Virus record (IMG/VR): IMGVR_UViG_3300044640_001495
Span: 62,001-126,000 of that record
Reading direction: 5' to 3' (one strand)
DNA: 64,000 nucleotides
Notes under the pieces: generated by a model
Databases searched by the model: none
What the model was told of the DNA's origin: nothing
What the model saw: only the letters and a program-made list of their open reading frames with translations
Made by a program: the position numbers and the translations under genes
Shown here: piece after piece, positions 7,632-25,536 of the stretch
Layout: the number at the start of each line of letters is the position of its first letter
Position numbering within the stretch: the stretch's first letter is position 1

Positions 7632-8183
7632 ATGTTAGATAAGATTTTATTCTGTCCCCTAGATATAGAATTAGATAATATAGAGTTTTCTGTAGTGGAC
7701 GGAACCCCCGTCATATCTAAATATAATCCTTATTGGAATTCTACTCTCATTTCTGATGAAACGATCAAAAAAAATAATTTTGATGAAGTTCTTAAACAAT
7801 TACCATTTGATAAGATTTCCAATTTACAATATAAAATACAACAACAGACCGTAGATTCTCACGTAGATGTTTATCCAGAAATGAAATTCGCTCCTGGAGA
7901 ATATAAACATATACTAGATACAGAACCGGCAGGGTATCGATTTATTGTAAAAGGAGCAGTTGATAGTTTAGAAGTTTTTGATGGTACATCGTGGATTACT
8001 ACTAGAGTTCCTAAAATTCCTTGTGCGTATATTTTAAATTCTACTTCTGCAATTCATAGAGTTAAAGAAGACAAACAACGAACAACGATCTATATAAGAG
8101 GTTGGTTAGATAAGGAACGACATCTAGAACTATTAGAAAAAAGCCTAGAAAAATATAGCCAATATGTTGTTTGGAAAAACTAG
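7632..8183 (+). CDS. Hypothetical protein, possible HxD...H dioxygenase fold
   Basis: SHVD ... SAIHRV ... RTTIY pattern. Confidence 0.5.
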   Translation: MLDKILFCPLDIELDNIEFSVVDGTPVISKYNPYWNSTLISDETIKKNNFDEVLKQLPFDKISNLQYKIQQQTVDSHVDVYPEMKFAPGEYKHILDTEPAGYRFIVKGAVDSLEVFDGTSWITTRVPKIPCAYILNSTSAIHRVKEDKQRTTIYIRGWLDKERHLELLEKSLEKYSQYVVWKN

Positions 8184-8884
8184 TGAGTATGTTGTAGACT
8201 AGAAATTACTTTGGCAACATTCTCTGTAGTCATAGCTACATTAAGTATAAGATGTAGACTGTTATCTACCCAACTAATAGTGCGATGTGTCATCCTTGTG
8301 TTGAGATAATAGACTCTGCCATGTTCTATCTGTAGTTTTCGATCATCCATCCACCAATCATAGTCCAATGGTCCACAATTGTTTAAGAACACAATTAAAC
8401 GGAAAACATCTCTAGGCATTGACGGATGGTCTCTATGGGGGACAAAATAACCCCCTGTATCCGACCGAATCAAAAATGTCCTGCCCAACTGATCCCACTC
8501 ATCTAAAAAAGGTCTAAGACTATGGCAGGTATCGTAGACTACAGTCTTTTGACTGAACTCCAACTCACTCAGCCGGCGTTTGGCTGCATATGATGCTTGT
8601 GCTAGACTAGGATTGGTTTTATGATCTGTGCCGGGCAAACATGTAAGGGTGAGAGATTTTCTGTTATTAGGCCTGTCTGTTCTAGGAAGATAGTCTTGCC
8701 AGTCGTCTTTAAACTGTGCAATCTCCTGCATAACTTGTCCGCAGTCTATCTTCCATTTTAGCGGTTCAAAAACTCCTAAGTTGAGTAGGCTGACTTCGTT
8801 AGTAAGATTCTCTAGGCTTACGTTATTAGGCGAATAAGATTGACTTCTTCCACTTACACCTGGGGGGACCACTATATTATTCAT
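8180..8884 (-). CDS. Aspartyl/asparaginyl beta-hydroxylase-like 2OG-Fe(II) enzyme
   Basis: GGYFVPHRDH, GRVYYLNTRMTH and LHLILNV motifs. Confidence 0.7.
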   Translation of the reverse strand: MNNIVVPPGVSGRSQSYSPNNVSLENLTNEVSLLNLGVFEPLKWKIDCGQVMQEIAQFKDDWQDYLPRTDRPNNRKSLTLTCLPGTDHKTNPSLAQASYAAKRRLSELEFSQKTVVYDTCHSLRPFLDEWDQLGRTFLIRSDTGGYFVPHRDHPSMPRDVFRLIVFLNNCGPLDYDWWMDDRKLQIEHGRVYYLNTRMTHRTISWVDNSLHLILNVAMTTENVAKVISSLQHTH

Positions 8885-8926
8885 TGACTAATCCTTAAAA
8901 ATTTTTCTAAAAGTTCTTGAAACATG

Positions 8927-9817
8927 TTATTTCGCCAATCTTCTTAGAAACTCACCAACAGGCATTTTCCATTTATCAGTATAAGGTTTATATGCTGATA
9001 AAAACTTCTGCTGTATTTGGTCACAACAATCTTGGATTAATTCGCATCCATGATATTTTTCCCTTATTTCTATATTCCAATTTTTTTGATAAATTCTATA
9101 TTTGGCATATCTAGAGTTTATAGTTTCACTTGGTGGAGATTGAAATAATTCCAACATAATAGGATCATAGCCAACTGATAACACAATTTCAGGAGTCATC
9201 TGAAAAAAATTAATAGCTGCTGTCATGTTGTTTGCTATGGCGTATCTACACCAAGATAAGATATATTCATATTCTACGTATTTCCATTCGCCATCTAATC
9301 TATTTGCATAAAAGTCACCATTCCCCAAAACAGGTATACCATTTAGGTTAAAATATACATGATCCATTAATTTCATTGTAGGCAACATTTCCGCTTGGAA
9401 ACATTTTCCTTGTTCTGCCATTCTTAGAGATTCCGGAGAACCTAACCAGGTTAGTACATCTATATCTACATAGATAACTTCAAAATTTAATTCTTTAGAT
9501 AATTTTTCAACCACTTCTATTTCGTGTAAGTTTAAATTTTTGTTAAATCTATTTGTTATAACCTTAAATGGTTGTCCTAATTCTAAGAAAGCTCTAACCA
9601 CAACTTCGCTATCAGCCCCTCCGCTTAACAACACATAAGGAAGTTTGTTCACAGTTTTTGAGTAATTGCTAATTATTTCACAGACATTGATACACTCATC
9701 TCTGAACGAGCTAGGAGTTCTAGTTGCTTTAGAGTACCAACATTGAAATGCGTCTGATTGGTGTTGTCTTAGATTGTACTGGTTTCCATTGTATCCAAAT
9801 CTAAAATTTTGATCCAT
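8927..9817 (-). CDS. PP-loop (adenine nucleotide alpha hydrolase / Asn-synthase-like) protein
   Basis: VLLSGGADSEVV PP-loop; start refined to MDQNF to avoid overlap with the desaturase. Confidence 0.65.
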   Translation of the reverse strand: MDQNFRFGYNGNQYNLRQHQSDAFQCWYSKATRTPSSFRDECINVCEIISNYSKTVNKLPYVLLSGGADSEVVVRAFLELGQPFKVITNRFNKNLNLHEIEVVEKLSKELNFEVIYVDIDVLTWLGSPESLRMAEQGKCFQAEMLPTMKLMDHVYFNLNGIPVLGNGDFYANRLDGEWKYVEYEYILSWCRYAIANNMTAAINFFQMTPEIVLSVGYDPIMLELFQSPPSETINSRYAKYRIYQKNWNIEIREKYHGCELIQDCCDQIQQKFLSAYKPYTDKWKMPVGEFLRRLAK

Positions 9818-9825
9818 CTCAAATT

Positions 9826-10593
9826 TTATTTTTTGACCGGATGAGCTAACAGAGTACATGCATCAAACTCCCATTTTTTTCCGCTTACAGATTTTCCAAA
9901 ATCAAAACTAGACGGCATTTGATGATGATTATTATGCCATCCGTTTCCCCAAAACATTAAGCCTAACATAGGGATATTTCTTGATTTATCTTTAGTTTCA
10001 AAATTTCTATATCCAACGTTGTCACTATGACAGAATGTATTAATAAGTCCCTCACCATGAAATGCAACAATTGTTGGCACAATAGCAAACCAATATAATA
10101 AATTTAAATCAATCAATCCCAGAACTATCCACGATAACAAAATAATTACTTCATAATACTTGGCTGTGAATGCCATTTTTTTATCACGTACTAGGTCAAC
10201 AGCAAACTTGTAGTTTACATTGGTAGGATCATGTTTTAAAATCCAACCCACAAAAGCATGCCATCTTCCAAAAATTGGAGAATGTTCGTCTTTTTCTGTA
10301 TCGGCAAATCTATGATGATATCCTCGGTGTACCGCGGCCCACCAGATTGGATGACCCTGGCATGATAACACACTGGCATAAATTATCAAATTCTCTGCCC
10401 ATGATTTTAAAATGATCGATCTATGAGATGCCCATCTATGAAGTCCTATTGCTACTCCGTACCCACCAATAAAAATATAGCCTGCTAGAAAATACAATAG
10501 ACTGGTAAAATTGTAATCTACGAAAAAAAACAACAAAACCAATAGTATGTGTAAAGGGAAAAACGTAGTTAACAGGTATTTGTAATTTTTCAT
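9826..10593 (-). CDS. Membrane fatty-acid (delta-9-type) desaturase
   Basis: His boxes HRWASH, HRGYHH and WHNNHH; hydrophobic segments; DPHSP-like DEHSP motif. Confidence 0.9.
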   Translation of the reverse strand: MKNYKYLLTTFFPLHILLVLLFFFVDYNFTSLLYFLAGYIFIGGYGVAIGLHRWASHRSIILKSWAENLIIYASVLSCQGHPIWWAAVHRGYHHRFADTEKDEHSPIFGRWHAFVGWILKHDPTNVNYKFAVDLVRDKKMAFTAKYYEVIILLSWIVLGLIDLNLLYWFAIVPTIVAFHGEGLINTFCHSDNVGYRNFETKDKSRNIPMLGLMFWGNGWHNNHHQMPSSFDFGKSVSGKKWEFDACTLLAHPVKK

Positions 10594-10623
10594 AGAGGGA
10601 TGATTCCGATTAAATATATTTAT

Positions 10624-11223
10624 ATGATGCCAAAATCCCTATCGCTTAAATCGAATCCCGGAGAGGACTTGTGGAATGAATGCATGGAAACTATAAAATC
10701 TCGGTGCTGTGCAGATCCATTGTATGAAAATTATGTAAATCTAACTCCTGCACAATATTATTATTTTGTGACAGCGATACACGAAAATAAGATTGTATCC
10801 TTTGGTGCCATAGAATATTCTCCTCACAAATGGGGAGAGAAAATTGCAAGAGTATTAACTAGATTTTGGATACATCCAGATTTTAGAAGCAACGGATTAA
10901 CCAAGTGGGGCCCTAGTGCTGTTAGATTTAGTCCAATTATACTTAACGCTCAGCTTGAATTTTTAAATTCACAGAATAAAATAAAAGTTGCTATGATCAC
11001 AAGAGAAGGAAAATACTCGAAAAGTTTTAAAGAAATAACAAAACTTGCATCGTCTGTTTCAGTTGATTCTTTTGAAATATTAGAAAATATATACAATGTC
11101 TGCGGAGACTCGAACGACGATTCGTGTTATCAAATGGTAGCACTGTCGTCAATAAGCCATGAAGACAAATGGAATGTCTTTTCCGAAGCAATATCTGCTG
11201 GATTCTTTAAAGGACCAAATTAA
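10624..11223 (+). CDS. GNAT-like acetyltransferase (putative)
   Basis: ARVLTRFWIHPDFRSNG resembles GNAT motif A. Confidence 0.5.
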   Translation: MMPKSLSLKSNPGEDLWNECMETIKSRCCADPLYENYVNLTPAQYYYFVTAIHENKIVSFGAIEYSPHKWGEKIARVLTRFWIHPDFRSNGLTKWGPSAVRFSPIILNAQLEFLNSQNKIKVAMITREGKYSKSFKEITKLASSVSVDSFEILENIYNVCGDSNDDSCYQMVALSSISHEDKWNVFSEAISAGFFKGPN

Positions 11224-12074
11224 TGAAGTTTTACGTAAAAGATTGTCCTGCGCACCTGTCATTGTTCCAGTGGATATACGAACAGAGCGATTTCTATACA
11301 GCAATAAATGATATTGCTACATCAACTAAAGTAGACGATATAATAGAATTGCCTCACAAAATTGATATTCCTTCACTTGTAAAAGATACCCTATCAGCAC
11401 TGGAAACGTTTGGAACCAAAGGTTGGCAAACAACCAAAGGTCAAAGTAAGGCCTACGGTGGTCTCAGCATGGTATACAACCCAGATCTAATAGACACAAT
11501 TGATCCTAATCAACATACACTAGGCACACCTGTAAACGCTCCGGATCAATTTTATTACGGCAGTACAGAAAATTTTCGTTCTACAAGAAATACATACTTT
11601 GACAGTTATGGATTTAGAAAACTATCACCATGCATCTCACAAACTAATCTTAAAAATTTTATCAGTGAATTTCGTCTTTCACCTACACGAAGTAGGATAG
11701 CTGTGTTAGATGCCGACATGCATGATAGGGTAGGTGAAGAATTCCTTTGGCACAAAGATGAAACTATATTCGAAAATCTCAGGATCAACATTCCTATCGA
11801 CACTGATTCTTCTTTTCTATTCCAACTCGAAAATAAGCTGCCGACTCATTTAGAGCTAGGAAAAATATATACTTGGGATACAAATTTACCACATAGGGTA
11901 TATGCCACAAAAAAATCTACTAAAAAAAGAACCCATTTAGTATTAGGATTCACGCCCTGGATTGATTATATAGAAAATGAAGATTGCTTTGTATTAAATT
12001 CCCACTTTGGTAAATTACATCCGTTTGATATTCTTCTAAACGGATCAGCACATCAAAGCATTGGTCAGGTATAA
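11223..12074 (+). CDS. AspH-like HxD...H dioxygenase (putative)
   Basis: LWHKDE, LRINIPI and YTWDTNLPHRV...RTHLVLG motifs. Confidence 0.6.
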   Translation: MKFYVKDCPAHLSLFQWIYEQSDFYTAINDIATSTKVDDIIELPHKIDIPSLVKDTLSALETFGTKGWQTTKGQSKAYGGLSMVYNPDLIDTIDPNQHTLGTPVNAPDQFYYGSTENFRSTRNTYFDSYGFRKLSPCISQTNLKNFISEFRLSPTRSRIAVLDADMHDRVGEEFLWHKDETIFENLRINIPIDTDSSFLFQLENKLPTHLELGKIYTWDTNLPHRVYATKKSTKKRTHLVLGFTPWIDYIENEDCFVLNSHFGKLHPFDILLNGSAHQSIGQV

Positions 12075-13306
12075 TTAACAATTATAGAAGAAATTAAATT
12101 TTGATATTTTTCGTTTAAATCGTTAAGATCACTACCTGATATATAAACATATCCGTTATTGCTAATTGCTAAATCGTTCCTTGGAAGATTAACTTTATTA
12201 TTAGTTGGTAATTTAATATAGTCTGCAAGAAAGTCTTTTTTAATCTCTATGCTTTTAATGAGACCCGGTTTTAATCCTAAATCTCTTTTCATACTACACT
12301 TGCTTTTGTTTAACAACATATTTTTATTTTTAAGAATAGAGTTAACTAACTTTGATGCATAGTGATTTTCTCCAGAGTATTGCAATAGATGGCATCCTAC
12401 GGAAACTCGAGCTGCAAAATCAATGAAATAAATATTTCCCTCTTTTAATATCACATCTAGCATGAACGGACAATTATCTAACTCAGTTAAAGAAATAAAC
12501 TTTTCTAATTTAATTTTGATATTTTCATAAAAATCGCTGTTAAAATATTTAGACGGATACACTAATGCTGTTTCAGCCGCATAGGGATATGAATTAGATT
12601 CTATATCATAAAAAAAATCTAAACTAAGAGATTTATTAAGTATGTGTCCAATCACAGAGATTATTGGTCCATCAATATATTCCTGAATTATGTAATCACT
12701 ATCTGCCGAATAATATTCAAAAGTTTTAAATTTTTCACCATGGCTTTCTTGATAATCGTGTACTTTAACATCGACGTCTTTAAAAAAATCTACAAGACTT
12801 TCTCTAGAAGAAATTATTTTTATCCCCAAACTTGCCATTCCCCCTGACGGTTTTACTAAACATGGAAATTTAATATCTGAAGATACAATGTTTAATGTTT
12901 TTTTATTTTTAACAATTTGATAAATTTTAGGAACATTGATCTTTAGATCTTTCCATATTTTGTAATAAACTATTTTTTCTTTAATTTTTTCGTATGATTT
13001 TAATTTAATTCCCGGTAGATCAAATTTACTGTTTATTTCAGCAATTAATTTCATATGATGATCGGGGAATGTAGGATAGATATATTGATATTTTTTTGTT
13101 TCTAATAATTGAGAAAGTAAATTTAAAAATTGATCGGTAGTATCAACAACAAATATGTTATCAAATTTAGATAGATGTGGCTTCATTAGATCAAATTCGG
13201 GATGATCTTTAGGAACAATTATATCTAAATTATAACCTTGATTTATTAAATCATAGATCGTAGATAAATGATGATATCCGCGACATAACAACAAAATATT
13301 ATTCAT
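12065..13306 (-). CDS. ATP-grasp ligase (L-amino-acid-ligase-like)
   Basis: FPCLVKPSGGMASLGI, YIIQEYIDGP and IYFIDFAAR motifs. Confidence 0.8.
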   Translation of the reverse strand: MNNILLLCRGYHHLSTIYDLINQGYNLDIIVPKDHPEFDLMKPHLSKFDNIFVVDTTDQFLNLLSQLLETKKYQYIYPTFPDHHMKLIAEINSKFDLPGIKLKSYEKIKEKIVYYKIWKDLKINVPKIYQIVKNKKTLNIVSSDIKFPCLVKPSGGMASLGIKIISSRESLVDFFKDVDVKVHDYQESHGEKFKTFEYYSADSDYIIQEYIDGPIISVIGHILNKSLSLDFFYDIESNSYPYAAETALVYPSKYFNSDFYENIKIKLEKFISLTELDNCPFMLDVILKEGNIYFIDFAARVSVGCHLLQYSGENHYASKLVNSILKNKNMLLNKSKCSMKRDLGLKPGLIKSIEIKKDFLADYIKLPTNNKVNLPRNDLAISNNGYVYISGSDLNDLNEKYQNLISSIIVNYT

Positions 13307-14474
13307 TTATTAATCTCACAAAATGCCACTTTGAAAATAAATGTTGATATCTTCCTCTTACTTTTCCAAAATCTCGTTGGCTTCTTTCCACTCCTAAATA
13401 CAATCTTTTATCTAATTGAGATAAAAATAGACTATTCATATCTAAAAAACTATCACGACATTTGGTTAATTCTGGATGCTCAAAAATCCAAAAATGTTTA
13501 TCTTCTCTGTCTGCAATATTTGGTTTATCAGCCTGAAAATTATTTGTCCAGTTATCATATAATACTTGCCTTGCTACAGAGTTTTGCATTCTAATAGATA
13601 ATAATGTAAAATCCAATGGCCAATCTTTACTTACATCTGAATAATAATATTGTCTTAAATGAAAATTATCATCAACATATGATGACAACTGATAGGCTTG
13701 TTCCATAGCTAATATTGGGAATTTTGGAGACCAATAAAAATATTCAGTTCCGTATCTATTTTCTTGTGAAGGAATTCCCATCCCTGTACCAGTGTCGGTA
13801 AAACTCATAAACCATTTATTATCTCTATAAGCTAACAACGGTTTATCTATTCCATAAATAGATCCAACTGTTTTACCCTTATTTAATTTGAGAAATTCCG
13901 ATTTACTATATGTCAGCATAAAAGGTATTTCTATATCATTCCATGTGTTAACATGATGCCATAAATCTTCTGTATAAATTTCAGGACTTAAATTATCTGT
14001 CCAATCTGCAATATTGATTTTAATCTGAGGATGATATTGTGACAGCCAATCAAGAACAGGTTTAATGGCAAAGTCCCATTCACTAAGAGTGTTCCTAGCC
14101 GAAGTGTCTAGTGTATTGGCCTTGTAAACTTGAGATTTTATAGCGGCCATTGGCCATTTCACACAAACTTCGTCTAATTTAATACCGTTGTCTATAAAGG
14201 ACCTAAGAACATTATAGCTGTCAGCGCCTCCCGAAAAATATAAAATTAGATAATCGTAGCTATCTCTAATCTGTTGAGCACGTTGTTGATAAAGTTTTTT
14301 GAGAGAAACTTTCCCCAACAAGGATCTATCAAAATTGTTCCAAATTTGATCAAAATATATGTAACTAACTTCCTGATTGGTGTCGGTAGCAAATACCAAT
14401 GCTTGAAATTTATTTTTAAATTTCGTAGCACCTACCTGCCAAAATCCTTCTACTTCTTGATTAAACATGTTCAT
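13299..14474 (-). CDS. PP-loop ATPase-like protein
   Basis: YDYLILYFSGGADSYNVL PP-loop; start refined. Confidence 0.65.
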   Translation of the reverse strand: MNMFNQEVEGFWQVGATKFKNKFQALVFATDTNQEVSYIYFDQIWNNFDRSLLGKVSLKKLYQQRAQQIRDSYDYLILYFSGGADSYNVLRSFIDNGIKLDEVCVKWPMAAIKSQVYKANTLDTSARNTLSEWDFAIKPVLDWLSQYHPQIKINIADWTDNLSPEIYTEDLWHHVNTWNDIEIPFMLTYSKSEFLKLNKGKTVGSIYGIDKPLLAYRDNKWFMSFTDTGTGMGIPSQENRYGTEYFYWSPKFPILAMEQAYQLSSYVDDNFHLRQYYYSDVSKDWPLDFTLLSIRMQNSVARQVLYDNWTNNFQADKPNIADREDKHFWIFEHPELTKCRDSFLDMNSLFLSQLDKRLYLGVERSQRDFGKVRGRYQHLFSKWHFVRLINE

Positions 14475-14524
14475 ATTTATAGACAAAAAAAATTATGGAA
14501 AATTAATATAATAAATACTTTACC

Positions 14525-15019
14525 ATGATATTACAGCCACTATATAAATTTATCAATTTCCAAACTTTACAGAAAGAAGTTTTGGAATTGGTAAAAAAAA
14601 TTAACGTTAACGACAATCAGCTAATATGTCAAGGATTAGAAAACGGTTCAAATGATTGGATCACAGGCATTGGTCGTATTGAAGAATTAGAAGAACAACA
14701 GGAACGAAATTATAAATTTATATATCCAGAGCTTCGTGGGACACTTCTAGAAAAATTTATTAAAGACCACAATGGTTTTAGAACTAGAATAATGTTAATG
14801 AATTCTAGAAAATGTTATTCTATCCATCGAGATCCAACCCCTAGATTGCATTTACCTATAATCACAAATGATCAGTGTTGGATGATATGGCCATATAAAA
14901 ATGAATGCCATCAGCTACATGAGGGAGTTGTGTATCGAGCAGATACAACACAAGATCACACTTTTATTAATGGATCTTTAGATCAAATTAGAATACACAT
15001 TGTAATGTGCATTGATTAA
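14525..15019 (+). CDS. AspH-like HxD...H dioxygenase (putative)
   Basis: YSIHRDP, RLHLPIITN and DTTQDHTFIN...RIHIV motifs. Confidence 0.7.
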   Translation: MILQPLYKFINFQTLQKEVLELVKKINVNDNQLICQGLENGSNDWITGIGRIEELEEQQERNYKFIYPELRGTLLEKFIKDHNGFRTRIMLMNSRKCYSIHRDPTPRLHLPIITNDQCWMIWPYKNECHQLHEGVVYRADTTQDHTFINGSLDQIRIHIVMCID

Positions 15020-15025
15020 TAATAT

Positions 15026-15997: not shown

Positions 15998-16039
15998 ATT
16001 AGTTCCTCGTTTAAATACACTATTATTTATCTAAGAGAT

Positions 16040-16963: not shown

Positions 16964-16964
16964 A

Positions 16965-19382: not shown

Positions 19383-20195
19383 ATGATTCACACCACTCAA
19401 ATTCCTTCTCAACACTGGCCAAAAAAGTTTGATCAATTTCGAGATTTGATTTATATTCCTCTAGATCTCCCAGAACCTCCTAAGGTCGATATCGATCTAT
19501 TTACAGATTGGGCCTTCACAAAAGCCCCCAAACTTGTAGGAAATATTAATCATCCCGAGACCGGTCAAAAAATTATGCATTTCGAGGAACGGGGTATGAA
19601 AGGCTGGGGATTTTATCCCTGGATCCAAGTTAGTGCATTTCATCACGGATACAGCAATTCTTGGATTTCAGAGTTTGATAAGATATTTCCAGATGTAGTT
19701 GAATACATTCATCTTTTCCCCTACAATATATTGTCCGGAGTAACTATCCTTTTACAAAAATCAAACGTGGCAGCTCCATTGCACACCGATGCCGATGATT
19801 GGCTAGGGATGAGATTTTATCTTCACAACGAAGTTAAAGAGGATGCGTTATATTTTTGTCCTAGAAAAACCAACGAAAACAATCGCATATCCACTTACAT
19901 TATAGAATCAGAAAATGTGTACCCACAAGAATGGGAGAAATACGTAGATTTAAATAAAAAAATTTACAGCAGTCATCCTTGCCAGAGACACGCCTGGGCG
20001 TTGACTAGTACGAGAGCAGCACACGGTATCGAAGCATTTGAATACGATCGATGTGCTAGGGTGACATTTTTAGTTCATTCGCATCGACCTTCTGTGAATC
20101 ACAACGCCTGGAACCCTGATAAATTGTATGACTTACTTACAAGATCTGTAAACAAATATTCAGATTATGCAATATGGTGGGAATCTTCAAAATAA
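19383..20195 (+). CDS. Hypothetical protein, possible HxD...H dioxygenase
   Basis: PLHTDAD ... RAAHG ... RVT; start refined to MIHTTQ. Confidence 0.5.
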   Translation: MIHTTQIPSQHWPKKFDQFRDLIYIPLDLPEPPKVDIDLFTDWAFTKAPKLVGNINHPETGQKIMHFEERGMKGWGFYPWIQVSAFHHGYSNSWISEFDKIFPDVVEYIHLFPYNILSGVTILLQKSNVAAPLHTDADDWLGMRFYLHNEVKEDALYFCPRKTNENNRISTYIIESENVYPQEWEKYVDLNKKIYSSHPCQRHAWALTSTRAAHGIEAFEYDRCARVTFLVHSHRPSVNHNAWNPDKLYDLLTRSVNKYSDYAIWWESSK

Positions 20196-20198
20196 AAA

Positions 20199-21635
20199 AT
20201 GCAAGTACTCATACTCACTACTAACACTGATCCTCGTAGACAGGTACGATATCTTGGACCATACCAGATAGCTTGGTGGTTGAGATCTAATGGCTATTCA
20301 ACGCAGGTACTTGATTACATTTACTTTATGACAAAGGAACAGAGATTATCTCTATTAAAAAAATTCATTACGACAGAAACAAAAATAGTAGGATATGCTC
20401 CTTTTGCTTTGCTTAAAACAAATCAAAGATTTGTACATGGTGAACAACTAATTCATGATATCCTAGATGAAGTCAAAGAAAATTTTCCCTGGGTTAAAAT
20501 TGTCATCGGGGGAGTCTGGGCAATAAATTGGATCAACTACGGTCGGAAAAAAATTAATTGGAAGGTAGATGCTGTGTTTAAAGATGAAGCGGAACACAGC
20601 TTTCTCGAATACTGCCATTATATTTTTAAAGGATCTTCTCATCCTAAGTTTACCATAGAAAACGATGTTAAGATAATACATCCTACACAAAAATATGATA
20701 TTCAAAATTGTTCAATGCGTTATGAAAAAAATGATTTTATCCTACCAGAAGAATCTCTTCCTTTAGAATTAAGTAGAGGTTGTATATTTAAATGCAAGTT
20801 TTGTCAATATCCTAACATAGGAAAAGACAAAGATGATTTTAATAAATCTATGGAGAGTATTAAACAATCTTTAATTCATAACTATGAAAACTTTGGAACC
20901 ACTAGATATCATCTATCAGATGATACACTGAATAGCCATAGAGAAAGAACAAGAGCATTCTGTGAGATGGTAAAGCAATTACCTTTCACAATAGAATATA
21001 TAGGATATGCTAGACTAGACCTGTTGTACATATGGCCGGAACAACAAGAACTATTACCCGAAAGTGGTTTGGTAAGTTGCCATTTTGGTATCGAATCATT
21101 CGACCCCGAATCTTGTAAAATCATAGGAAAAGGTTGGGGCGCCAAAAATAATAAATCTTCACTTAGAGACATCAGAACAAAATGGGGTGATGATGTGATA
21201 ATAAACTGCTCTATGATAGTGGGCCTTGGAAAAGAAACAGAACAAGACTGGCAAGATTCTCAAGAATGGTTTATACAGAATAAAATTCACGACTGGTTTT
21301 ATAATGTGCTATCGATACATAAAGGCGTTGCATCAAGTGAATTTGAAAGAGAATATGAAAAATATGGTTATAGATTTATTAATGATAGTGATTGGGAATG
21401 GGTTTCTAGCCATATGACTAGAGACAGAGCCACCGAATGGGTTAACAATAATATAAAAAAAATAGCTGGTATAGCAGTTCCTAGTGTTTGGAATTATTCG
21501 GCGCATAGAAATATAGGATTTTCCAAACAAGAGATTCTCGACAGCAATTATCTAGATCTTTTCGAAATCCGAGTAAAAAATCAGATGACAGAAAAACTTA
21601 TAGAAAAATATTATAAGCTGGCAATGGAGTATTAA
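20199..21635 (+). CDS. Cobalamin-binding-type radical SAM enzyme (class B methyltransferase-like)
   Basis: N-terminal Rossmann-like domain (LGPYQIAWWLR, IVIGG), SRGCIFKCKFC, DDT, and FGIES motifs. Confidence 0.85.
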   Translation: MQVLILTTNTDPRRQVRYLGPYQIAWWLRSNGYSTQVLDYIYFMTKEQRLSLLKKFITTETKIVGYAPFALLKTNQRFVHGEQLIHDILDEVKENFPWVKIVIGGVWAINWINYGRKKINWKVDAVFKDEAEHSFLEYCHYIFKGSSHPKFTIENDVKIIHPTQKYDIQNCSMRYEKNDFILPEESLPLELSRGCIFKCKFCQYPNIGKDKDDFNKSMESIKQSLIHNYENFGTTRYHLSDDTLNSHRERTRAFCEMVKQLPFTIEYIGYARLDLLYIWPEQQELLPESGLVSCHFGIESFDPESCKIIGKGWGAKNNKSSLRDIRTKWGDDVIINCSMIVGLGKETEQDWQDSQEWFIQNKIHDWFYNVLSIHKGVASSEFEREYEKYGYRFINDSDWEWVSSHMTRDRATEWVNNNIKKIAGIAVPSVWNYSAHRNIGFSKQEILDSNYLDLFEIRVKNQMTEKLIEKYYKLAMEY

Positions 21636-21636: not shown

Positions 21637-22218
21637 ATGGAAAAATGTTTTAGAAAACTTAATCTTGGAATTCCCGAAGATCATAAAATTTTTAAAGAAT
21701 ATCGTAGTTTCAATTATAGTCAGGTAGAAGTTAAATTATATGATTCGTCAAAAACTTTTAAACAATATAATCTACCTAAAGACTATTTTTTAGGAACCGA
21801 AGTACACAAAGTAATGTGTGATCTAAATTTACGTGCATCTATATTTTTAATAGAAGCCAACCATTTTTACAATTGGCATAGAGACGCATGGCGGAATATA
21901 ACTCTTAACTTGACGCTAGGTGAGGATGAAAATTATCTTGTTTTATTCGCTCCTGATGCAAATCCTAAAGAATCTACTGGGTCTATGATGTACGAAAGAT
22001 TTATCGAACTCAAATACGATCACAACAAATTTGTGTTATTGAACACACAAATTCCACATTTCACTGTCACTACAGGAATCAAAGATAGGTATCTATTAAC
22101 AATTGCACATTATTCTGGAAAACCAACAGAGTCTCTAAAAAATCGACCATGCGACGATTACACAGAATTTGAAAATACACTTCAATATTTCGCTGAACGG
22201 AATCTAGTCAAAGATTGA
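21637..22218 (+). CDS. HxD...H dioxygenase-like protein (putative)
   Basis: YNWHRDA ... LLNTQIPHFT ... RYLLT. Confidence 0.55.
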   Translation: MEKCFRKLNLGIPEDHKIFKEYRSFNYSQVEVKLYDSSKTFKQYNLPKDYFLGTEVHKVMCDLNLRASIFLIEANHFYNWHRDAWRNITLNLTLGEDENYLVLFAPDANPKESTGSMMYERFIELKYDHNKFVLLNTQIPHFTVTTGIKDRYLLTIAHYSGKPTESLKNRPCDDYTEFENTLQYFAERNLVKD

Positions 22219-22860
22219 TTATAAAGAAATTAAAAAATCATTATTTCTATATTGATTTTTCAAATAACCAATTCGATAAAGAAGATCTACATTCCAGGTT
22301 CTATTTCTCATCATTTGCCTATATCTTGGATGTGACGGCATTGTACCAGCAGGAATAATTGCCTCGTCAAAAAATTCATACCTATCTTTTATTATTGGTA
22401 TCTGTTGTCTCATTCTATTCCAGCGGTTGGTAGTTTTAGGATTAGCCACAATAAAATCATAGGAATAATATCCTATACTTTCTGCATGTGAAATGAGCAA
22501 TGTGCTGGTGTCAGCAATGCCATTATCCACAGCATTGAAAATAGAATTATTAGGACTACAAAGTATTATACATTGCCGCCAAGATTTGATCATATTCCAG
22601 AACTGACCAATAGCAATACATTTAATATTTTCTTCTTTGTCAAATACTAGAGCAATCTTATTTTTAGTTTGAGTTTCATTAGAAATCATTGTTTCGATAG
22701 ATTTGATAAAAACAGAGATATCAAAATCTTTATCATCAAAAGGATACGACCAAATTTTGGAAGTGTTCTGTTTATAATTTTTGGTGTCAACTAATAATTT
22801 TTCTAGATATACTAGATCATCTATAGTTCCAAACCTAGAGGAATATTCAGGATTTATCAT
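22219..22860 (-). CDS. Hypothetical protein (possible GNAT-like fold)
   Basis: 213-aa ORF; only weak pattern resemblance. Confidence 0.5.
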   Translation of the reverse strand: MINPEYSSRFGTIDDLVYLEKLLVDTKNYKQNTSKIWSYPFDDKDFDISVFIKSIETMISNETQTKNKIALVFDKEENIKCIAIGQFWNMIKSWRQCIILCSPNNSIFNAVDNGIADTSTLLISHAESIGYYSYDFIVANPKTTNRWNRMRQQIPIIKDRYEFFDEAIIPAGTMPSHPRYRQMMRNRTWNVDLLYRIGYLKNQYRNNDFLISL

Positions 22861-23782
22861 AGAAGTTGTGCGGCAACATTTCTGATTTTAGATATTTTGA
22901 AAAACAAAGTCTATTTTCTTTTATTCCACGATTGTATTCTTCGAATGACTCAGTAGAAGTTGCGAAAAAAACACACTTTGACATTTCTACTTTTAAAATT
23001 TCACAAAACTTTTCTTGTACTGCACGATATTTTTGATAATTGTAATCGGCAGTATATCGTTGTAATAGTTTTAATCCAACCGCAGCCGACAGTCTATTGA
23101 CGTATTTGTTTTTATTATAAACATATAAAGCATCATCATTGTCTTCTTTGGTTAGTCTCATGCCGATTCTAAGGTGTTGTACCGGAAAATTTTTACTAAG
23201 GCTGAATGTGATATCAGTAATACATTCATAAGAAAAATCAAAATTGATTCCGCCACAAACTCCAAAGTAGCAACAGTCGATTAACACTGGAACTTTTAGT
23301 GCTTCACAAGTTTCTAAAACCGAATCAGTCATTACATGTTCATTTCCGGTGCCAGCGAACGGAAGACTAAAAATCACCACGTCATTTTCTTGTATTGGTT
23401 CATCTTCAATACAGACACTCTGATCAAAATATAGCTTGGCAGCTATTGAATGATACATGTATTCGCCTCGAAAATACCTTAACCTACGATTACGATTTTT
23501 TAGATAAAATTTATCAAAAGCTTCTGTGGTTCCGTTTGAAAAAGCGAGGCCTTGGAATTTTTCCAAACCTATAACTTGATTAGAGGTGGTTTTCATTATC
23601 CATGCTTTATACTCTTTTGTAAATTTATCGTGTATTTCATCATCATTCATACAATCATTTTGCAGAACATCAACAATGATATCAGATACTTCTTGTTCTA
23701 AATCTTGATCTTTAATGCAATGTACACTGCCAAAAGGTAATTTTTTTAATTCTAGTAATTTATTCCAAGTATTGTTTTTCAT
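22847..23782 (-). CDS. PLP-dependent aminotransferase-like enzyme (fold type I)
   Basis: IDCCY and FSLSK..LRIG motifs; start refined to MKNNTW. Confidence 0.7.
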   Translation of the reverse strand: MKNNTWNKLLELKKLPFGSVHCIKDQDLEQEVSDIIVDVLQNDCMNDDEIHDKFTKEYKAWIMKTTSNQVIGLEKFQGLAFSNGTTEAFDKFYLKNRNRRLRYFRGEYMYHSIAAKLYFDQSVCIEDEPIQENDVVIFSLPFAGTGNEHVMTDSVLETCEALKVPVLIDCCYFGVCGGINFDFSYECITDITFSLSKNFPVQHLRIGMRLTKEDNDDALYVYNKNKYVNRLSAAVGLKLLQRYTADYNYQKYRAVQEKFCEILKVEMSKCVFFATSTESFEEYNRGIKENRLCFSKYLKSEMLPHNFYDKS

Positions 23783-23838
23783 GAAATATTTATCATAGCA
23801 CTTTATTGCATAAATATTTTCACTTACGGAGATGAGTA

Positions 23839-24741
23839 GTGATACAAAAATTTTTATTAGGACTGAGCATGATGTTTTTTTTATCTGCTCCCAGCCAAGC
23901 ATTCGACGCTGGTTCCCAACTCATTAAAGTGGTGATGCCATTTGCTCCAGGAGGCGGTGTTGATCAAACTTTTAGGCATTTTGAAAATTGGGCAGCGAAA
24001 AAAAACATTAAGTTTGTAGCAGTTTACAGACCAGGAGCCGAAGGATTGATTGGCATGAATGAAATTGCCGCAATGCCCAAAGACGGATATCATATTTCTT
24101 TTGCAACAGCCGGCACCATAGCCGTCCAAAGATTGAAAAATCCTCAAGCAGAATTAGAAACAGTGACGTTGATAAAAAATAGTATTATGGCGTTTGTCAC
24201 TCATAAAGATAGTGGCATACGGTCTCTAACTGATTTGTATCAAGGTAATCCAAAAACTCTAGCCTACGGCGCACCCGGACAACTAATGACTATACAGCAG
24301 TTAATAGAACTTTCAGATGGAAAAATGAAAAGTGCCACTCTTGTGCCCTACAAAGGTGGAGCTCCAGTAGTACAAGATATTGCAGGCAATCATGTGCAGT
24401 TTGCAGCAGTACCATTGTTGATCACAAAGAGTTTTGTTGATTCGGGAACCATCCGATTACTGGCTGTAGACAGCACAACTAGATTAGCAGAATATCCCAA
24501 CATTCCCACGTTTAAAGAAATCTTCCCTAAGTGGAAAAGTACTGACGGATTTGCCGTGGTATTGCCCAAGGGAACTGATACAAAAGCTGTAGAATTTTGG
24601 AATTCTATATTGAAAGAATATGTCACAGATCAAAAAGTACAAGCTGACTTTTTGAAAGACTACAATATGTCGCAAAAATTTGGTAAAGAAGAATTGGAAA
24701 AAACTGTTTCTAATGCAATTAACGCATTAGAAAAAAAATAA
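23839..24741 (+). CDS. Tripartite tricarboxylate transporter substrate-binding protein (Bug/TctC family)
   Basis: Signal peptide, VVMPFAPGGGVD, PGAEGLIG..., VPYKGGAPVVQDIAGNHV and IPTFKE motifs. Confidence 0.85.
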   Translation: MIQKFLLGLSMMFFLSAPSQAFDAGSQLIKVVMPFAPGGGVDQTFRHFENWAAKKNIKFVAVYRPGAEGLIGMNEIAAMPKDGYHISFATAGTIAVQRLKNPQAELETVTLIKNSIMAFVTHKDSGIRSLTDLYQGNPKTLAYGAPGQLMTIQQLIELSDGKMKSATLVPYKGGAPVVQDIAGNHVQFAAVPLLITKSFVDSGTIRLLAVDSTTRLAEYPNIPTFKEIFPKWKSTDGFAVVLPKGTDTKAVEFWNSILKEYVTDQKVQADFLKDYNMSQKFGKEELEKTVSNAINALEKK

Positions 24742-24771
24742 TATGCACCTTGCTGTCATAAGAAAAATGTC

Positions 24772-25536
24772 ATGAATATCAACCAATACATCGATAGGGT
24801 AAAATTTAAAACCCTACCACAAGATTTTAATCATCAAGATGGTAAGAACTATGAAAGCTCTTACGAATACACCAAGACCTTTAGCAACTATCATTTTGAT
24901 AAATTTAAACAGGAGCATGAGGGTGAATGGTATCATCGGCTGGGAAGATTCAAAGGAGATTGGGCAGACGATGTTGCTAAAATTATAGATAAATCAAAAT
25001 CATTATCCTGGGATCAAAGTACGGCGGCAGGTCAACGTCCGGGATTCCCTGGGGGTGTTAGTCCAATGAGAACACAAGAGCAAAACGACAGAAAGGCTCA
25101 CGGTTTAGACCATGTTGATCATACTAACTTAGTTTTAGAAGAATATCTAGATCAGTTTCCTAAAATTAAAAAAATGGTAGACCATTGGCATTTAGAAAAA
25201 GTTAGTTATCGTTGCCATGTGCAATGGCCTGGTCAGACGTTCGCCATGCACATTGATAAATTATGGCATCGCAATCCCACAGACCCGTCAAAAATAGTTA
25301 GGATTATTGTACATCTAGAAGATTACGAACCCGGCCAGATCCTTATATACGGTAATGCAGTACACACTCAGTGGAGAGCTGGCGATGTTCATATGTTCGA
25401 TACCTTGAATGTTCCGCATGGAACTTTTAATATTTCAAATAAACCAAGACCAAATATCACTATCACAGGATTGAGATCAGCCCTTACTGATCAAAGATTG
25501 CAAGAAGCTACTGCTGAATCAGAATATTGTATATAA
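24772..25536 (+). CDS. AspH-like HxD...H dioxygenase (putative)
   Basis: PGQTFAMHIDK ... WRAGDV...NVPHGTFN...R. Confidence 0.65.
   Translation: MNINQYIDRVKFKTLPQDFNHQDGKNYESSYEYTKTFSNYHFDKFKQEHEGEWYHRLGRFKGDWADDVAKIIDKSKSLSWDQSTAAGQRPGFPGGVSPMRTQEQNDRKAHGLDHVDHTNLVLEEYLDQFPKIKKMVDHWHLEKVSYRCHVQWPGQTFAMHIDKLWHRNPTDPSKIVRIIVHLEDYEPGQILIYGNAVHTQWRAGDVHMFDTLNVPHGTFNISNKPRPNITITGLRSALTDQRLQEATAESEYCI

What the first reader, a model, noticed from the sequence alone, without database searches (positions are those of the whole stretch)
7632..25536. Array of at least nine divergent HxD...H dioxygenase-like proteins
Seen: a metal-triad pattern in ORFs at 7632 (HVD..H), 8180 (HRD..H), 11223 (HKD..H), 14525 (HRD..H), 15026 (HVD..H), 16965 (HSD..H), 19383 (HTD..H), 21637 (HRD..H) and 24772 (HID..H). 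Several share the AspH-like R-x-H/N-x-P-I and D/N-T-x-x-x-H signatures. Three more oxygenase-like genes lie outside the island (213, 3528, 28904). Established: AspH-type enzymes hydroxylate protein Asp/Asn or lipid A acyl chains (LpxO). Inference: position-specific hydroxylases acting on related substrates.
Basis: partly seen in the sequence, partly recalled or inferred. Interest (0 to 1): 0.6.

Follow-up and report, generated by a model that had tools for sequence, protein, structure and literature searches.

The report
Nine iron/2-oxoglutarate oxygenases in phage island
A low-GC accessory island of a 353-kb marine jumbo phage really does carry nine very different Fe(II)/2-oxoglutarate oxygenase-type genes, but they are separate gene cassettes from three lineages, a pattern already known from marine myophages, not one duplicated array.

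Summary
All nine ORFs carry HxD...H at the stated places. Eight also carry an Arg 8-12 residues after the second His; 8180 does not.

The bare motif is weak evidence: 10 of 22 island ORFs match, against about 4 expected by shuffling. Independent tests support all nine:
- 16965 is a clear TauD-family enzyme (3.5e-56).
- 14525 passes Pfam Asp_Arg_Hydrox and matches the solved small-molecule beta-hydroxylase Cpz10 (3.5e-16), with triad and Arg aligned.
- 11223, 8180, 21637, 15026 and, marginally, 24772 join the same AspH-like group by profile-profile comparison (81-98%; controls below 1%).
- 7632 is homologous to 19383 (96.7%). Together they form a family with no Pfam model.

The genes are not tandem paralogues. 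They are interleaved, on both strands, with desaturases, radical SAM, PLP, PP-loop, ATP-grasp and sulfation genes. The island lies between a tail-fibre gene and thyX. Related phages carry the same families in shuffled order.

Two conserved gene pairs stand out: TctC binding protein with the 254-aa oxygenase, and a 478-aa radical SAM with a 21637-type oxygenase. Substrates remain unknown. "Related substrates" is not supported.

The parts
7632..8183 (+). 183-aa oxygenase-like protein of a family without a Pfam model ('PLD...KYxDYAIW' family); H77, D79, H142, R150
   Evidence: Pfam, PHROGs and NCBIfam give no hit. There are 17 homologue clusters, with H77/D79/H142/R150 invariant. hhalign to the 19383 family gives 96.7%, E 3.2e-10, with HxD, H, R and the C-terminal motif aligned. 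The fold is inferred from the 19383 model.
8180..8884 (-). 234-aa AspH-like oxygenase; H150, D152, H200; no Arg at the usual 2OG-binding position (Ser/Leu there)
   Evidence: Its orthologue in Pelagibacter phage Mosig is annotated as an Asp_Arg_Hydrox domain protein (32.5% identity, E 2e-22); that orthologue scores 18 bits for PF05118, below the cut-off. hhalign to Pfam-positive phage AspH proteins gives 87.2%. An HMM built from those proteins hits it at 4.2e-3. Motif columns align.
11223..12074 (+). 283-aa AspH-like oxygenase; H177, D179, H224, R236; 'LRINIPI' strand
   Evidence: No direct Pfam hit. hhalign to Pfam-positive AspH proteins gives 93.4%, and to the 21637/15026 family 91.4%. The HMM of Pfam-positive AspH proteins hits it at 1.2e-6. 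Homologues occur in Ralstonia jumbo phages RsoM2USA and RSP15.
14525..15019 (+). 164-aa Cpz10-like AspH-family beta-hydroxylase; H101, D103, H145, R156
   Evidence: Pfam Asp_Arg_Hydrox 24.8 bits, above the 22.6 cut-off. PDB 7v4f (Cpz10) matches at E 3.5e-16 over residues 16-162. Its H101/D103/H145/R156 align with Cpz10 H115/D117/H160/R170, and the Cpz10 H123 and H172 positions are also His here (PMC9814697).
15026..15601 (+). 191-aa probable AspH-like oxygenase; H77, D79, H154, R164. This is the least supported of the nine.
   Evidence: phmmer to L004:12074 gives 9e-10. hhalign to the 21637 group gives 89.4%. It aligns with the invariant H/D/H/R columns of A6. Atlas feature search gives leads to PF05118 and PF13640 at 0.88 only. 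It was not folded.
16965..17795 (-). 276-aa TauD/TfdA-family 2OG dioxygenase; H99, D101, H257, R267
   Evidence: Pfam TauD 3.5e-56, full length. PDB matches: RdpA 1.2e-46, TauD 4.3e-35, AtsK 2.5e-23.
19383..20195 (+). 270-aa oxygenase of the same unmodelled family as 7632; H134, D136, H214, R226
21637..22218 (+). 193-aa AspH-like oxygenase; H81, D83, H141, R151; starts 1 nt after radical SAM 478
   Evidence: No direct Pfam hit. A profile search finds 1283 representative relatives. In a 101-sequence alignment the only invariant columns are H81, D83, H141 and R151. hhalign of that family to the 14525 family gives 96.3%, and to Pfam-positive AspH proteins 94%. A paralogue lies at genome 306916-307740 (E 1e-32).
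24772..25536 (+). 254-aa oxygenase of a large family without a Pfam model; H160, D162, H216, R226; always next to a TctC gene
23839..24741 (+). TctC-family periplasmic solute-binding protein with an N-terminal signal-peptide-like segment; conserved upstream partner of the 254-aa oxygenase
   Evidence: Pfam TctC 3.1e-27. It is the only TctC in the genome, and no TctA was found. A TctC gene lies at most one gene upstream of the 254-aa gene in 8 of 9 independent contexts.
20199..21635 (+). 478-aa radical SAM enzyme; conserved neighbour of 21637/15026-type oxygenases
   Evidence: Pfam Radical_SAM 3.9e-14. It is adjacent to a 21637/15026-type gene in the window, in L006 and in L004.
22847..23902 (-). 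351-aa PLP aminotransferase-like protein ('SLSKNF...LRIG'); recurs in related islands
   Evidence: Weak NCBIfam transaminase hits. Orthologues in L006 and L008 score E 1e-139 and 1e-163.
13299..14486 (-). 395-aa PP-loop (SGGADS) protein; recurs in every related island examined that has DNA
   Evidence: The motif is seen in the translation. Orthologues occur in L004, L006, L008 and L009.
8927..19365 (.). Other interleaved island genes: PP-loop/QueC-like 8927(-), desaturases 9826(-), 17792(-) and 18553(-), GNAT 10600(+), ATP-grasp 12065(-), radical SAM 16040(+)
   Evidence: Pfam. Radical SAM 16040 matches PDB 7tol (GDGT/MAS lipid synthase) at 4.9e-19.
25575..27916 (.). Right end of the island: sulfotransferase 25575(+), unknown 26312(+), FA_hydroxylase 26676(-), APS-kinase-like plus nucleotidyltransferase-like 27122(-)
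   Evidence: Pfam.
213..830 (+). 2OG-FeII_Oxy_5 oxygenase outside the island, among tRNA genes
   Evidence: Pfam 1e-13, 51.9 bits. tRNAs.
3528..4100 (+). Probable 2OG-FeII_Oxy_5-like oxygenase (sub-threshold)
   Evidence: Pfam 6.4e-4, 20.5 bits, below the cut-off of 27. Orthologue in L009.
28904..29452 (+). 2OG-FeII_Oxy_3 (prolyl-hydroxylase-type) oxygenase just upstream of thyX
   Evidence: Pfam 3.9e-7, 31.4 bits.

Best explanation
The nine genes encode soluble, single-domain Fe(II)/2-oxoglutarate-dependent oxygenases of the double-stranded beta-helix fold. They come from three lineages:
- one TauD-family enzyme (16965);
- an AspH/Cpz10-like group (14525, 11223, 8180, 21637, 15026, and peripherally 24772);
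- a previously unmodelled family (7632 and 19383).

Inferred mechanism: each binds Fe(II) through the HxD...H triad. In eight of nine, the C5 carboxylate of 2OG is bound through the Arg 8-12 residues after the distal His. 2OG is decarboxylated to form an Fe(IV)-oxo species, which oxidises (most likely hydroxylates) a C-H bond.

They are not a duplicated array. They are separate 1-3-gene cassettes in a low-GC, mixed-strand, hypervariable accessory island. The island lies between a tail-fibre gene and thyX in a 353-kb marine jumbo phage whose clamp loader is closest to PA5oct. It is the same kind of island already described in pelagimyophages and cyanomyophages.

My best reading is that the oxygenases act in the infected cell on different small-molecule or lipid substrates, as tailoring or catabolic steps alongside their conserved neighbours:
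- the 254-aa enzyme acts on a solute delivered by the adjacent phage TctC binding protein through a host TTT permease, analogous to TauA/TauD;
- the 21637-type enzyme works with the 478-aa radical SAM.

Shown: the motifs, the fold of two proteins, the homology links and the gene linkage. Inferred: catalysis, substrates and physiological role.
For: - Pfam: TauD 3.5e-56 and Asp_Arg_Hydrox 24.8 bits.
- 14525 matches Cpz10 (7v4f) at 3.5e-16, with triad and Arg aligned. Cpz10 is a characterised small-molecule hydroxylase (PMC9814697).
- H, D, H and R are invariant in four family alignments. In a 101-sequence alignment with 15% mean column identity, they are the only invariant columns.
- hhalign links are 81-98%, while six unrelated island proteins score below 1%.
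- An HMM built only from Pfam-positive AspH proteins of other phages finds 14525, 11223, 8180 and the 21637 paralogue.
- There is no pairwise similarity among the nine.
- GC is 0.28-0.36 in the island against 0.40-0.47 in the flanks, and the strand switches about 12 times.
- Related contigs carry the same families in shuffled order at the same genomic position.
- Pelagibacter phage Mosig has an analogous island next to a tail-fibre gene.
- The literature describes such islands and multi-copy 2OG oxygenases (PMC7029224; PMC3037559).
- TctC is linked to the 254-aa gene in 8 of 9 contexts.
- None of the nine has a membrane-spanning segment: maximum KD19 is 1.26 or less, against 2.2-2.5 for the desaturases.
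Against: - No activity, metal or cofactor binding was measured.
- Only two of the nine were folded.
- 15026 rests on a two-step homology chain (89%) plus motif conservation.
- 8180 lacks the usual Arg.
- 24772 joins the AspH-like group only at 81% (44% to the Pfam-positive set).
- The substrate proposals rest on gene neighbourhood alone.
- The repeated co-occurrence of the same families across phages could equally mean one joint pathway.
Confidence: 0.6

Rival explanations
1. One coherent biosynthetic gene cluster. The oxygenases, three desaturases, FA hydroxylase, two radical SAM enzymes, PLP enzyme, PP-loop enzymes, ATP-grasp, GNAT, sulfotransferase and kinase act in sequence on one scaffold (a lipid, aminolipid, nucleoside-like or peptide molecule) to make a heavily oxidised or sulfated product. 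That product could, for example, remodel the host envelope.
For: - The same set of families recurs together in related phages.
- L006 adds AMP-binding, PP-binding, KR, BKACE and carbamoyltransferase genes.
- 14525's closest solved relative is a natural-product tailoring enzyme.
- Radical SAM 16040 resembles a lipid-modifying enzyme (7tol, 4.9e-19).
- Published pelagimyophage islands are thought to modify the host surface (PMC7029224).
Against: - Gene order and content are shuffled between relatives, and the strand switches about 12 times.
- I identified no scaffold-forming enzyme in the window (PKS, NRPS, glycosyltransferase or precursor peptide).
- A secreted binding protein (TctC) fits uptake better than biosynthesis.
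Confidence: 0.2
2. One reading: a family of position-specific hydroxylases acting on related substrates such as protein Asp/Asn residues (virion or host proteins) or lipid A acyl chains (LpxO-like).
For: - Six of the nine are AspH/PF05118-like.
- PF05118 includes AspH and LpxO (established knowledge).
- The best structural neighbours include protein prolyl hydroxylases.
- Lipid-modifying genes lie in the island.
Against: - Three unrelated lineages are present and there is no pairwise similarity.
- Each has its own orthologues and its own gene partners.
- There are no TPR or other substrate-recognition domains and no membrane anchor.
- The closest characterised relative acts on a small molecule.
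Confidence: 0.12
3. Nucleotide or DNA hypermodification. The oxygenases work with the P-loop kinase/nucleotidyltransferase, PLP enzyme, radical SAM enzymes, GNAT and PP-loop (QueC-like) proteins to modify bases of phage DNA.
For: - The island abuts thyX.
- Relatives carry dCMP deaminase, GTP cyclohydrolase I, PTPS and QueC-like genes nearby.
- Cpz10 acts on a uridine derivative.
- The enzyme classes overlap those of known thymidine hypermodification clusters (my own knowledge, not tested).
Against: - None of the nine matched a Pfam nucleic-acid oxygenase family such as Tet_JBP or AlkB.
- The desaturases, FA hydroxylase, TctC and sulfotransferase do not fit this model.
- No DNA glycosylase or transferase-type enzyme was identified.
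Confidence: 0.06
4. The motif matches are coincidental, and several of the seven Pfam-negative ORFs are not oxygenases.
For: - The bare motif is expected by chance in about 4 of 22 island ORFs.
- Seven of the nine have no Pfam, PHROGs or NCBIfam hit.
- Profile searches against PDB found nothing for A1, A2 or A3.
Against: - Two DSBH models.
- Motif residues are invariant in deep alignments.
- hhalign links with clean controls.
Confidence: 0.02

Closest known systems
Cpz10, the caprazamycin beta-hydroxylase (PDB 7V4F/7V4M; PMC9814697)
   Same: - Small (about 180 aa), soluble, single-domain AspH-like Fe(II)/2OG hydroxylase.
- 14525 aligns over nearly its full length (E 3.5e-16), with H115/D117/H160, R170 and also H123/H172 conserved.
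   Different: - Cpz10 sits in a Streptomyces nucleoside-antibiotic cluster and acts on an aminoacyl-glycyluridine.
- I recognised no gene for the rest of that pathway here.
- Only 14525 is this close. The other eight are much more distant or unrelated.
Pfam PF05118 Asp_Arg_Hydrox (human AspH, Salmonella LpxO, OlsC)
   Same: - HxD...H triad, 'RxHxPI' strand and 'DTxxxH' motif.
- 14525 passes the gathering score.
- 11223, 8180, 21637 and 15026 link to the family by profile-profile comparison.
   Different: - No TPR domain (AspH) and no membrane segment (LpxO).
- Five of the six AspH-like genes fail the Pfam threshold.
- Human AspH lacks the carboxylate ligand, whereas these keep it (established knowledge).
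Hypervariable 'host recognition cluster' islands of pelagimyophages and cyanomyophages (PMC7029224; Pelagibacter phage Mosig MT647606)
   Same: - A variable island next to tail-fibre genes, holding AspH-like genes, TauD, desaturase, radical SAM cassettes, aminotransferases, GNAT and transport-related genes.
- 8180 has an orthologue in Mosig.
   Different: - This phage is a 353-kb jumbo phage whose clamp loader is closest to Pseudomonas phage PA5oct (55.6%), not a T4-like Kyanoviridae member.
- It holds nine oxygenases in 18 kb, against two AspH-like genes plus one TauD in the Mosig stretch.
- No glycosyltransferases were seen in this island.
Multi-copy 2OG-Fe(II) oxygenases of marine cyanomyophages (Sullivan et al. 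2010, PMC3037559)
   Same: Several divergent 2OG oxygenase genes per marine phage genome, some near tRNA hot-spots. The window's 213 and 3528 genes lie among 8 tRNAs.
   Different: - Cyanophages list 1-5 copies per genome.
- This genome has about 18 candidates.
- Most island copies belong to families other than PF13640 and PF13759.
TauABC/TauD-type 'binding protein plus 2OG dioxygenase' scavenging modules
   Same: - A periplasmic solute-binding protein gene lies directly upstream of a cytoplasmic 2OG oxygenase gene: TctC then the 254-aa gene, in 8 of 9 contexts.
- A true TauD-family gene is also in the island.
   Different: - The binding protein is of the TTT (TctC) type, not ABC.
- The permease is absent from this phage.
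- The oxygenase is a new AspH/prolyl-hydroxylase-like family, not TauD.
- The ligand is unknown.
Proline 3-hydroxylase (1E5R), PHD2 and bacterial P4H
   Different: - Sequence identity is only 10-19%.
- There is no sequence-level hit.
- A shared fold does not indicate the substrate.

Membership tests
Fe(II)/2OG-dependent oxygenase superfamily (DSBH fold) | Double-stranded beta-helix (jelly-roll) core | tested here: met
Fe(II)/2OG-dependent oxygenase superfamily (DSBH fold) | HxD/E...H facial triad conserved across the family | tested here: met
   Present in all nine. Invariant in alignments A1, A2, A3/A4 and A6. In 14525 it aligns with the crystallographic triad of Cpz10.
Fe(II)/2OG-dependent oxygenase superfamily (DSBH fold) | Basic residue (Arg/Lys) binding the 2OG C5 carboxylate, usually about 10 residues after the distal His | tested here: inconclusive
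   Arg lies at +8 to +12 in eight of nine and is invariant in the family alignments. 8180 and its orthologues have Ser/Leu there; another residue may substitute.
Fe(II)/2OG-dependent oxygenase superfamily (DSBH fold) | Triad side chains converge on one metal site; 2OG-dependent turnover | not testable with these tools
   Model coordinates were not exposed to the scripts. In both models the triad residues sit at the strand positions expected for strands II and VII, and the Arg at the start of the last strand.
Pfam PF05118 Asp_Arg_Hydrox | Score above the curated gathering threshold (22.6 bits) | tested here: not met
   Only 14525 passes (24.8 bits). 7632, 8180, 11223, 15026, 19383, 21637 and 24772 give no hit at E of 0.01 or less. 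Orthologues of 8180 and 15026 reach only 18 and 13 bits. Only 4 of 101 relatives of 21637/15026 reach E of 1e-3 or less.
Pfam PF05118 Asp_Arg_Hydrox | Profile-profile relatedness to bona fide members, with the motif columns aligned | tested here: met
   hhalign to Pfam-positive phage AspH proteins: 14525 97.6%, 21637/15026 94%, 11223 93.4%, 8180 87.2%. 24772 reaches only 44% (81% to the 21637 family). The 7632/19383 family reaches 1.6%, so this feature is not met for those two. Controls score below 1%.
AspH proper (EGF-domain Asp/Asn beta-hydroxylase) | TPR substrate-recognition domain fused to the oxygenase domain | tested here: not met
   The proteins are 164-283 aa and single-domain. No TPR or other second domain appears in the Pfam or NCBIfam scans.
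LpxO/OlsC lipid hydroxylases | Membrane association through hydrophobic segments; acts on acyl chains | tested here: not met
   No 19-residue window exceeds a Kyte-Doolittle mean of 1.26 in any of the nine, whereas the island's desaturases reach 2.2-2.5. Activity on lipids was not tested.
TauD/TfdA family (PF02668) | Full-length match above threshold, with H-x-D...H...R | tested here: met
   16965 only: 191.5 bits over profile positions 4-267 of 267. PDB matches are RdpA, TauD and AtsK at 1e-46 to 1e-23. The substrate is not predictable from this.
Tandem paralogue array (recent duplication) | Detectable pairwise similarity and adjacency of the copies | tested here: not met
   No pair among the nine reaches E below 0.1 by phmmer against the genome's ORFs. 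Only 14525/15026 are adjacent. The closest paralogue of 21637 lies about 223 kb away.

The most novel reading that the evidence does not exclude
The conserved core of the island is TctC binding protein, 254-aa oxygenase, 478-aa radical SAM with its 21637-type oxygenase, PLP enzyme, 395-aa PP-loop enzyme and Cpz10-like hydroxylase. In the most novel reading, this core is a phage-borne pathway of a kind not yet described. One version: the phage secretes its own solute-binding protein, hijacks a host TTT permease to import a specific dissolved organic acid or sulfonate, and oxidises it during infection. The other version: the genes together make a phage-specified oxidised metabolite or lipid. On either version, the 254-aa family and the 7632/19383 family would be two new 2OG oxygenase families with new chemistry.
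Probability: 0.2. Interest if true: 0.7.

Novelty: new member of a known kind. Interest (0 to 1): 0.42.

Why it matters
The result turns a motif-level guess into a tested annotation for seven 'hypothetical' phage proteins.

It also defines two widespread families of Fe(II)/2OG oxygenases that have no Pfam model. One is the 254-aa family, with more than 120 clusters at 90% identity. The other carries an N-terminal PLD motif and a C-terminal KYxDYAIW motif.

It shows that a PA5oct-like marine jumbo phage carries the same oxygen-dependent accessory island described in pelagimyophages and cyanomyophages, but enlarged: about 18 oxygenase candidates per genome.

The conserved pairs give concrete, testable handles on what these abundant marine phage oxygenases do, a question open since they were first listed in cyanophage genomes. 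The pairs are TctC with the 254-aa oxygenase, and radical SAM with the 21637-type oxygenase.

Tried and rejected
- Megablast of the island and of its flank against 50,697 phage records found no match.
- tblastn of 7632 against phages found nothing.
- The search for related loci with 21637 returned only two 100%-identical contigs, so it was no use for building alignments.
- PHROGs and NCBIfam scans of the Pfam-negative ORFs gave nothing useful.
- Profile searches of A1, A2 and A3 against PDB sequences gave no credible hit. A6 gave only a marginal hit to Cpz10 (E 0.061).
- hhalign of the 7632 family against the 24772 family was negative (0.1%). The 7632/19383 family is unrelated to all other groups at profile level. 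I therefore rejected the idea that all nine form one sequence superfamily detectable by profiles.
- ESM Atlas feature search for 15026 and 21637 gave only leads: PF05118 and PF13640 at 0.88-0.92, below or near the reliability limit.
- Promoter and terminator scans of the island gave counts equal to shuffled sequence (93 against 94; 10 against 9.4). Nothing can be said about operon structure.
- The PhyH search of the genome found nothing, and the controls were silent too, so it is uninformative.
- A literature search for jumbo-phage 2OG oxygenases returned nothing. The Mosig genome announcement does not discuss its island.
- The iterative jackhmmer chain is treated as supportive only, because inclusion steps near E 1e-3 in a small database can drift. 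The hhalign matrix with negative controls replaces it as the main evidence.
- I did not use reads tools, complex prediction or any alternative genetic code.

Full report
**Setting.** The window is bases 62,001-126,000 of a single 353,123-bp IMG/VR virus record estimated 98% complete. Its flanks look like a large myophage: thyX at 29466, a clamp loader at 59672, baseplate and tail-fibre-like proteins, and an Mtd_N tail-fibre gene at 5807. The clamp loader is closest to Pseudomonas jumbo phage PA5oct and relatives (55.6% identity). From about 7.6 to 28 kb the GC content drops to 0.28-0.36, against 0.40-0.47 on either side. In that stretch genes lie on both strands in runs of 1-3, whereas the flanks are almost entirely on the + strand. 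Two other IMG/VR contigs carry the island at 100% protein identity, so it is not an assembly accident.

**The observation.** All nine ORFs exist and each has HxD followed 44-158 residues later by a His. Eight also have an Arg 8-12 residues after that His, followed by an alternating hydrophobic strand. This is the usual position of the 2OG C5-carboxylate ligand (established knowledge of the superfamily). 8180 is the exception. The bare pattern is not strong evidence: HxD..H..R matches 10 of 22 island ORFs of 120-320 aa, shuffled versions of the same proteins give 3.9 on average (maximum 9), and 28 of 202 ORFs elsewhere match. The tenth island match, sulfotransferase 25575, is a chance hit. Independent evidence was therefore needed.

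**Direct family scans.** Pfam recognises only two of the nine: 16965 as TauD (3.5e-56, full length) and 14525 as Asp_Arg_Hydrox (24.8 bits against a 22.6 cut-off). PHROGs and NCBIfam add nothing. The three genes outside the island are 2OG-FeII_Oxy_5 (213, 51.9 bits), sub-threshold 2OG-FeII_Oxy_5 (3528, 20.5 bits) and 2OG-FeII_Oxy_3 (28904, 31.4 bits). phmmer of the nine against all ORFs of the genome shows no significant similarity between any two of them. The only clear paralogue is a copy of 21637 at genome position 306916-307740 (1e-32). They are therefore not a recently duplicated array.

**14525.** This protein matches the solved structure 7v4f at E 3.5e-16 over residues 16-162. 7v4f is Cpz10, a 182-aa AspH-like Fe(II)/2OG beta-hydroxylase from caprazamycin biosynthesis. 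It hydroxylates an aminoacyl-glycyluridine intermediate. Its facial triad is H115/D117/H160, and an R170A mutant was crystallised (PMC9814697). Counting along the printed alignment, 14525's H101, D103, H145 and R156 fall on exactly those residues. Cpz10's H123 and H172 are also conserved.

**11223, 8180, 21637 and 15026.** I collected divergent relatives from related contigs and, for 21637/15026, from the one large profile search. That search found 1283 representative proteins at E of 1e-3 or less. In a 101-sequence alignment of those relatives, with a mean column identity of 15%, the only invariant columns are H81, D83, H141 and R151. Only 4 of the 101 reach Pfam PF05118, and no other family appears.

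Profile-profile comparisons:

| Pair | hhalign probability |
|---|---|
| 14525 family vs Pfam-positive AspH proteins of other phages | 97.6% |
| 14525 family vs 21637/15026 family | 96.3% |
| Pfam-positive set vs 11223 | 93.4% |
| Pfam-positive set vs 8180 | 87.2% |
| Pfam-positive set vs 21637/15026 | 94.0% |
| 21637/15026 vs 24772 family | 81% |

15026 alone links to the 21637 group at 89.4%. Six other island proteins used as negative controls never exceed 0.7%. An HMM built only from four Pfam-positive AspH proteins of other phages finds 14525 (2e-9), 11223 (1e-6), the 21637 paralogue (6e-4) and 8180 (4e-3) among the genome's 1052 ORFs. 8180 also has an orthologue in Pelagibacter phage Mosig that its authors annotated as an Asp_Arg_Hydrox domain protein, although it scores below the Pfam cut-off. 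An iterative jackhmmer run gave the same grouping, with the HxD, RxHxPI, DTxxPH and R columns in register. I treat it as supportive only. 15026 is the least secure of the nine.

**Three lineages.** The nine therefore fall into three lineages: TauD (1 gene), AspH/Cpz10-like (6, with 24772 peripheral), and the 7632/19383 family (2). The last is unrelated to the others at profile level (below 8%). Genome-wide, I count about 18 oxygenase candidates by adding the PF13759 and PF13640 hits and the 21637 paralogue.

**Context.** The other island genes are:
- two PP-loop proteins (8927, 13299);
- three stearoyl-CoA-desaturase-type membrane desaturases (9826, 17792, 18553) and a FA_hydroxylase-family protein (26676);
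- a GNAT (10600) and an ATP-grasp enzyme (12065);
- two radical SAM enzymes; 16040 resembles the lipid-crosslinking GDGT/MAS enzyme (7tol, 4.9e-19), and 20199 is 478 aa;
- a PLP aminotransferase-like protein (22847);
- a TctC solute-binding protein with a signal-peptide-like N-terminus (23839);
- a sulfotransferase (25575) and an APS-kinase-like/nucleotidyltransferase-like protein (27122).

Contigs carrying homologues of the 254-aa gene show islands at the same place, between an Mtd_N tail-fibre gene and Hc1/thyX. They hold the same families in different order and number, plus extras: AMP-binding, carrier protein, KR, BKACE, carbamoyltransferase, Rieske, DctP, TctA and an FAD monooxygenase.

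Two linkages stand out:
- A TctC gene lies on the same strand, at most one gene upstream of the 254-aa gene, in 8 of 9 independent contexts.
- The roughly 478-aa radical SAM abuts a 21637/15026-type oxygenase in the window, L006 and L004.

The phage has one TctC and no TctA, so its binding protein would have to use a host permease.

**Comparison with what is known.** Pelagibacter phage Mosig has an analogous stretch beside a tail-fibre gene. It holds two Asp_Arg_Hydrox genes, a desaturase, TauD, aminotransferases, MoaA-like radical SAM genes, a GNAT and a carbamoyltransferase. Zaragoza-Solas et al. describe such hypervariable 'host recognition cluster' islands in pelagimyophages, with radical SAM cassettes, transport and LPS genes. 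They list aspartyl/asparaginyl beta-hydroxylase as core to the group (PMC7029224). Sullivan et al. tabulated 1-5 2OG-Fe(II) oxygenase genes per cyanomyophage and suggested a link to 2OG and nitrogen status (PMC3037559). The kind of thing is therefore known.

What is new here:
- the density, with nine oxygenases in 18 kb;
- the host phage lineage;
- fold-level assignment of two unmodelled families;
- the two conserved gene pairs.

**Interpretation.** I consider it well supported that all nine are Fe(II)/2OG-type oxygenases. I put this at about 0.85 overall, lower for 15026 and for cofactor use by 8180. My preferred reading is a set of independently mobile cassettes acting on different small-molecule or lipid substrates, with the TctC/254-aa pair as an uptake-plus-oxidation module. 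A single joint pathway is the main rival.

**Limits.**
- Only two proteins could be folded.
The first criterion, the DSBH fold, was tested and passed for two.
- Substrates rest on neighbourhood only.
- The linkage counts come from 9 and 4 contexts.

Noticed in passing
window 23839-25536; also L006, L008, L009, L013, L014, L015: A TctC-family solute-binding protein gene lies directly, or one gene, upstream of the 254-aa oxygenase in 8 of 9 independent phage contexts. One relative (L013) also carries TctA and DctP. This phage has no TctA.
   Followed up: partly
window 20199-22218; L006:10762-12768; L004:12074-14064: A roughly 478-aa radical SAM gene abuts a 21637/15026-type oxygenase gene, with gaps of 1-3 nt or an overlap, in three of four related islands. 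This suggests a two-enzyme unit.
   Followed up: partly
window 16040-16963: The best PDB match of this 307-aa radical SAM protein is the archaeal tetraether lipid synthase GDGT/MAS (7tol, E 4.9e-19), ahead of MoaA (1.1e-10).
   Followed up: no
window 9826-10593(-), 17792-18553(-), 18553-19365(-), 26676-27125(-): Three paralogous stearoyl-CoA-desaturase-type membrane desaturases share DNA-level similarity around a His box (repeat family D2). A 149-aa FA_hydroxylase-family protein also lies in the same island.
   Followed up: no
window 25575-26315(+) and 27122-27916(-): A sulfotransferase-like gene lies near a fusion of an APS-kinase-like P-loop domain with a cytidylyltransferase-like domain. 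Together they could form a sulfation module.
   Followed up: no
window 8180-8884(-): The 8180 family, including its Mosig and L004 orthologues, keeps HxD...H but has Ser/Leu where the other families have the 2OG-binding Arg. Its co-substrate binding may differ.
   Followed up: partly
window 33-4330: Eight tRNA genes (Ala, Thr x2, Met, Pro, Gly x2, Arg) are interleaved with the two 2OG-FeII_Oxy_5-type genes at 213 and 3528.
   Followed up: no
window 1139-1387: An 82-aa ORF matches the RNA polymerase Rpb6/omega subunit family (PF01192, E 7e-12), which is unusual for a phage.
   Followed up: no
window 4328-4382 and 32790-32844: A 55-nt repeated element contains a perfect TTGACA-17-TATAAT promoter-like core (71% identity between the two copies). 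It may be a phage promoter motif.
   Followed up: no
window 5807-7591: A 594-aa tail-fibre-like protein has a Major tropism determinant N-terminal domain (Mtd_N, 5.6e-7) and an internal 108-nt direct repeat (6343-6450 and 6511-6618, 72%). It marks the left border of the island here and in relatives. Whether a diversity-generating retroelement is present was not checked.
   Followed up: no
genome 295-332 kb (outside the window; L010 = G000:C1:295001-312000): A second region is rich in oxygenase-like ORFs. It includes the 274-aa paralogue of 21637 at 306916-307740(-), weak PF13759 and PF13640-type candidates at 300784 and 307856, and a PF13640 gene at about 329613-330227.
   Followed up: partly
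window 41384-48745: A very large ORF of 2453 aa lies upstream of the baseplate and tail-fibre-like genes. It was not examined.
   Followed up: no
L006:20270-20765, L008:18667-19170, L013:16627-16768, L006:8050-8571: Relatives carry GTP cyclohydrolase I, PTPS (QueD-like) and dCMP deaminase genes near their islands. Together with the QueC-like PP-loop proteins, this hints at 7-deazaguanine or other nucleotide modification pathways.
   Followed up: no
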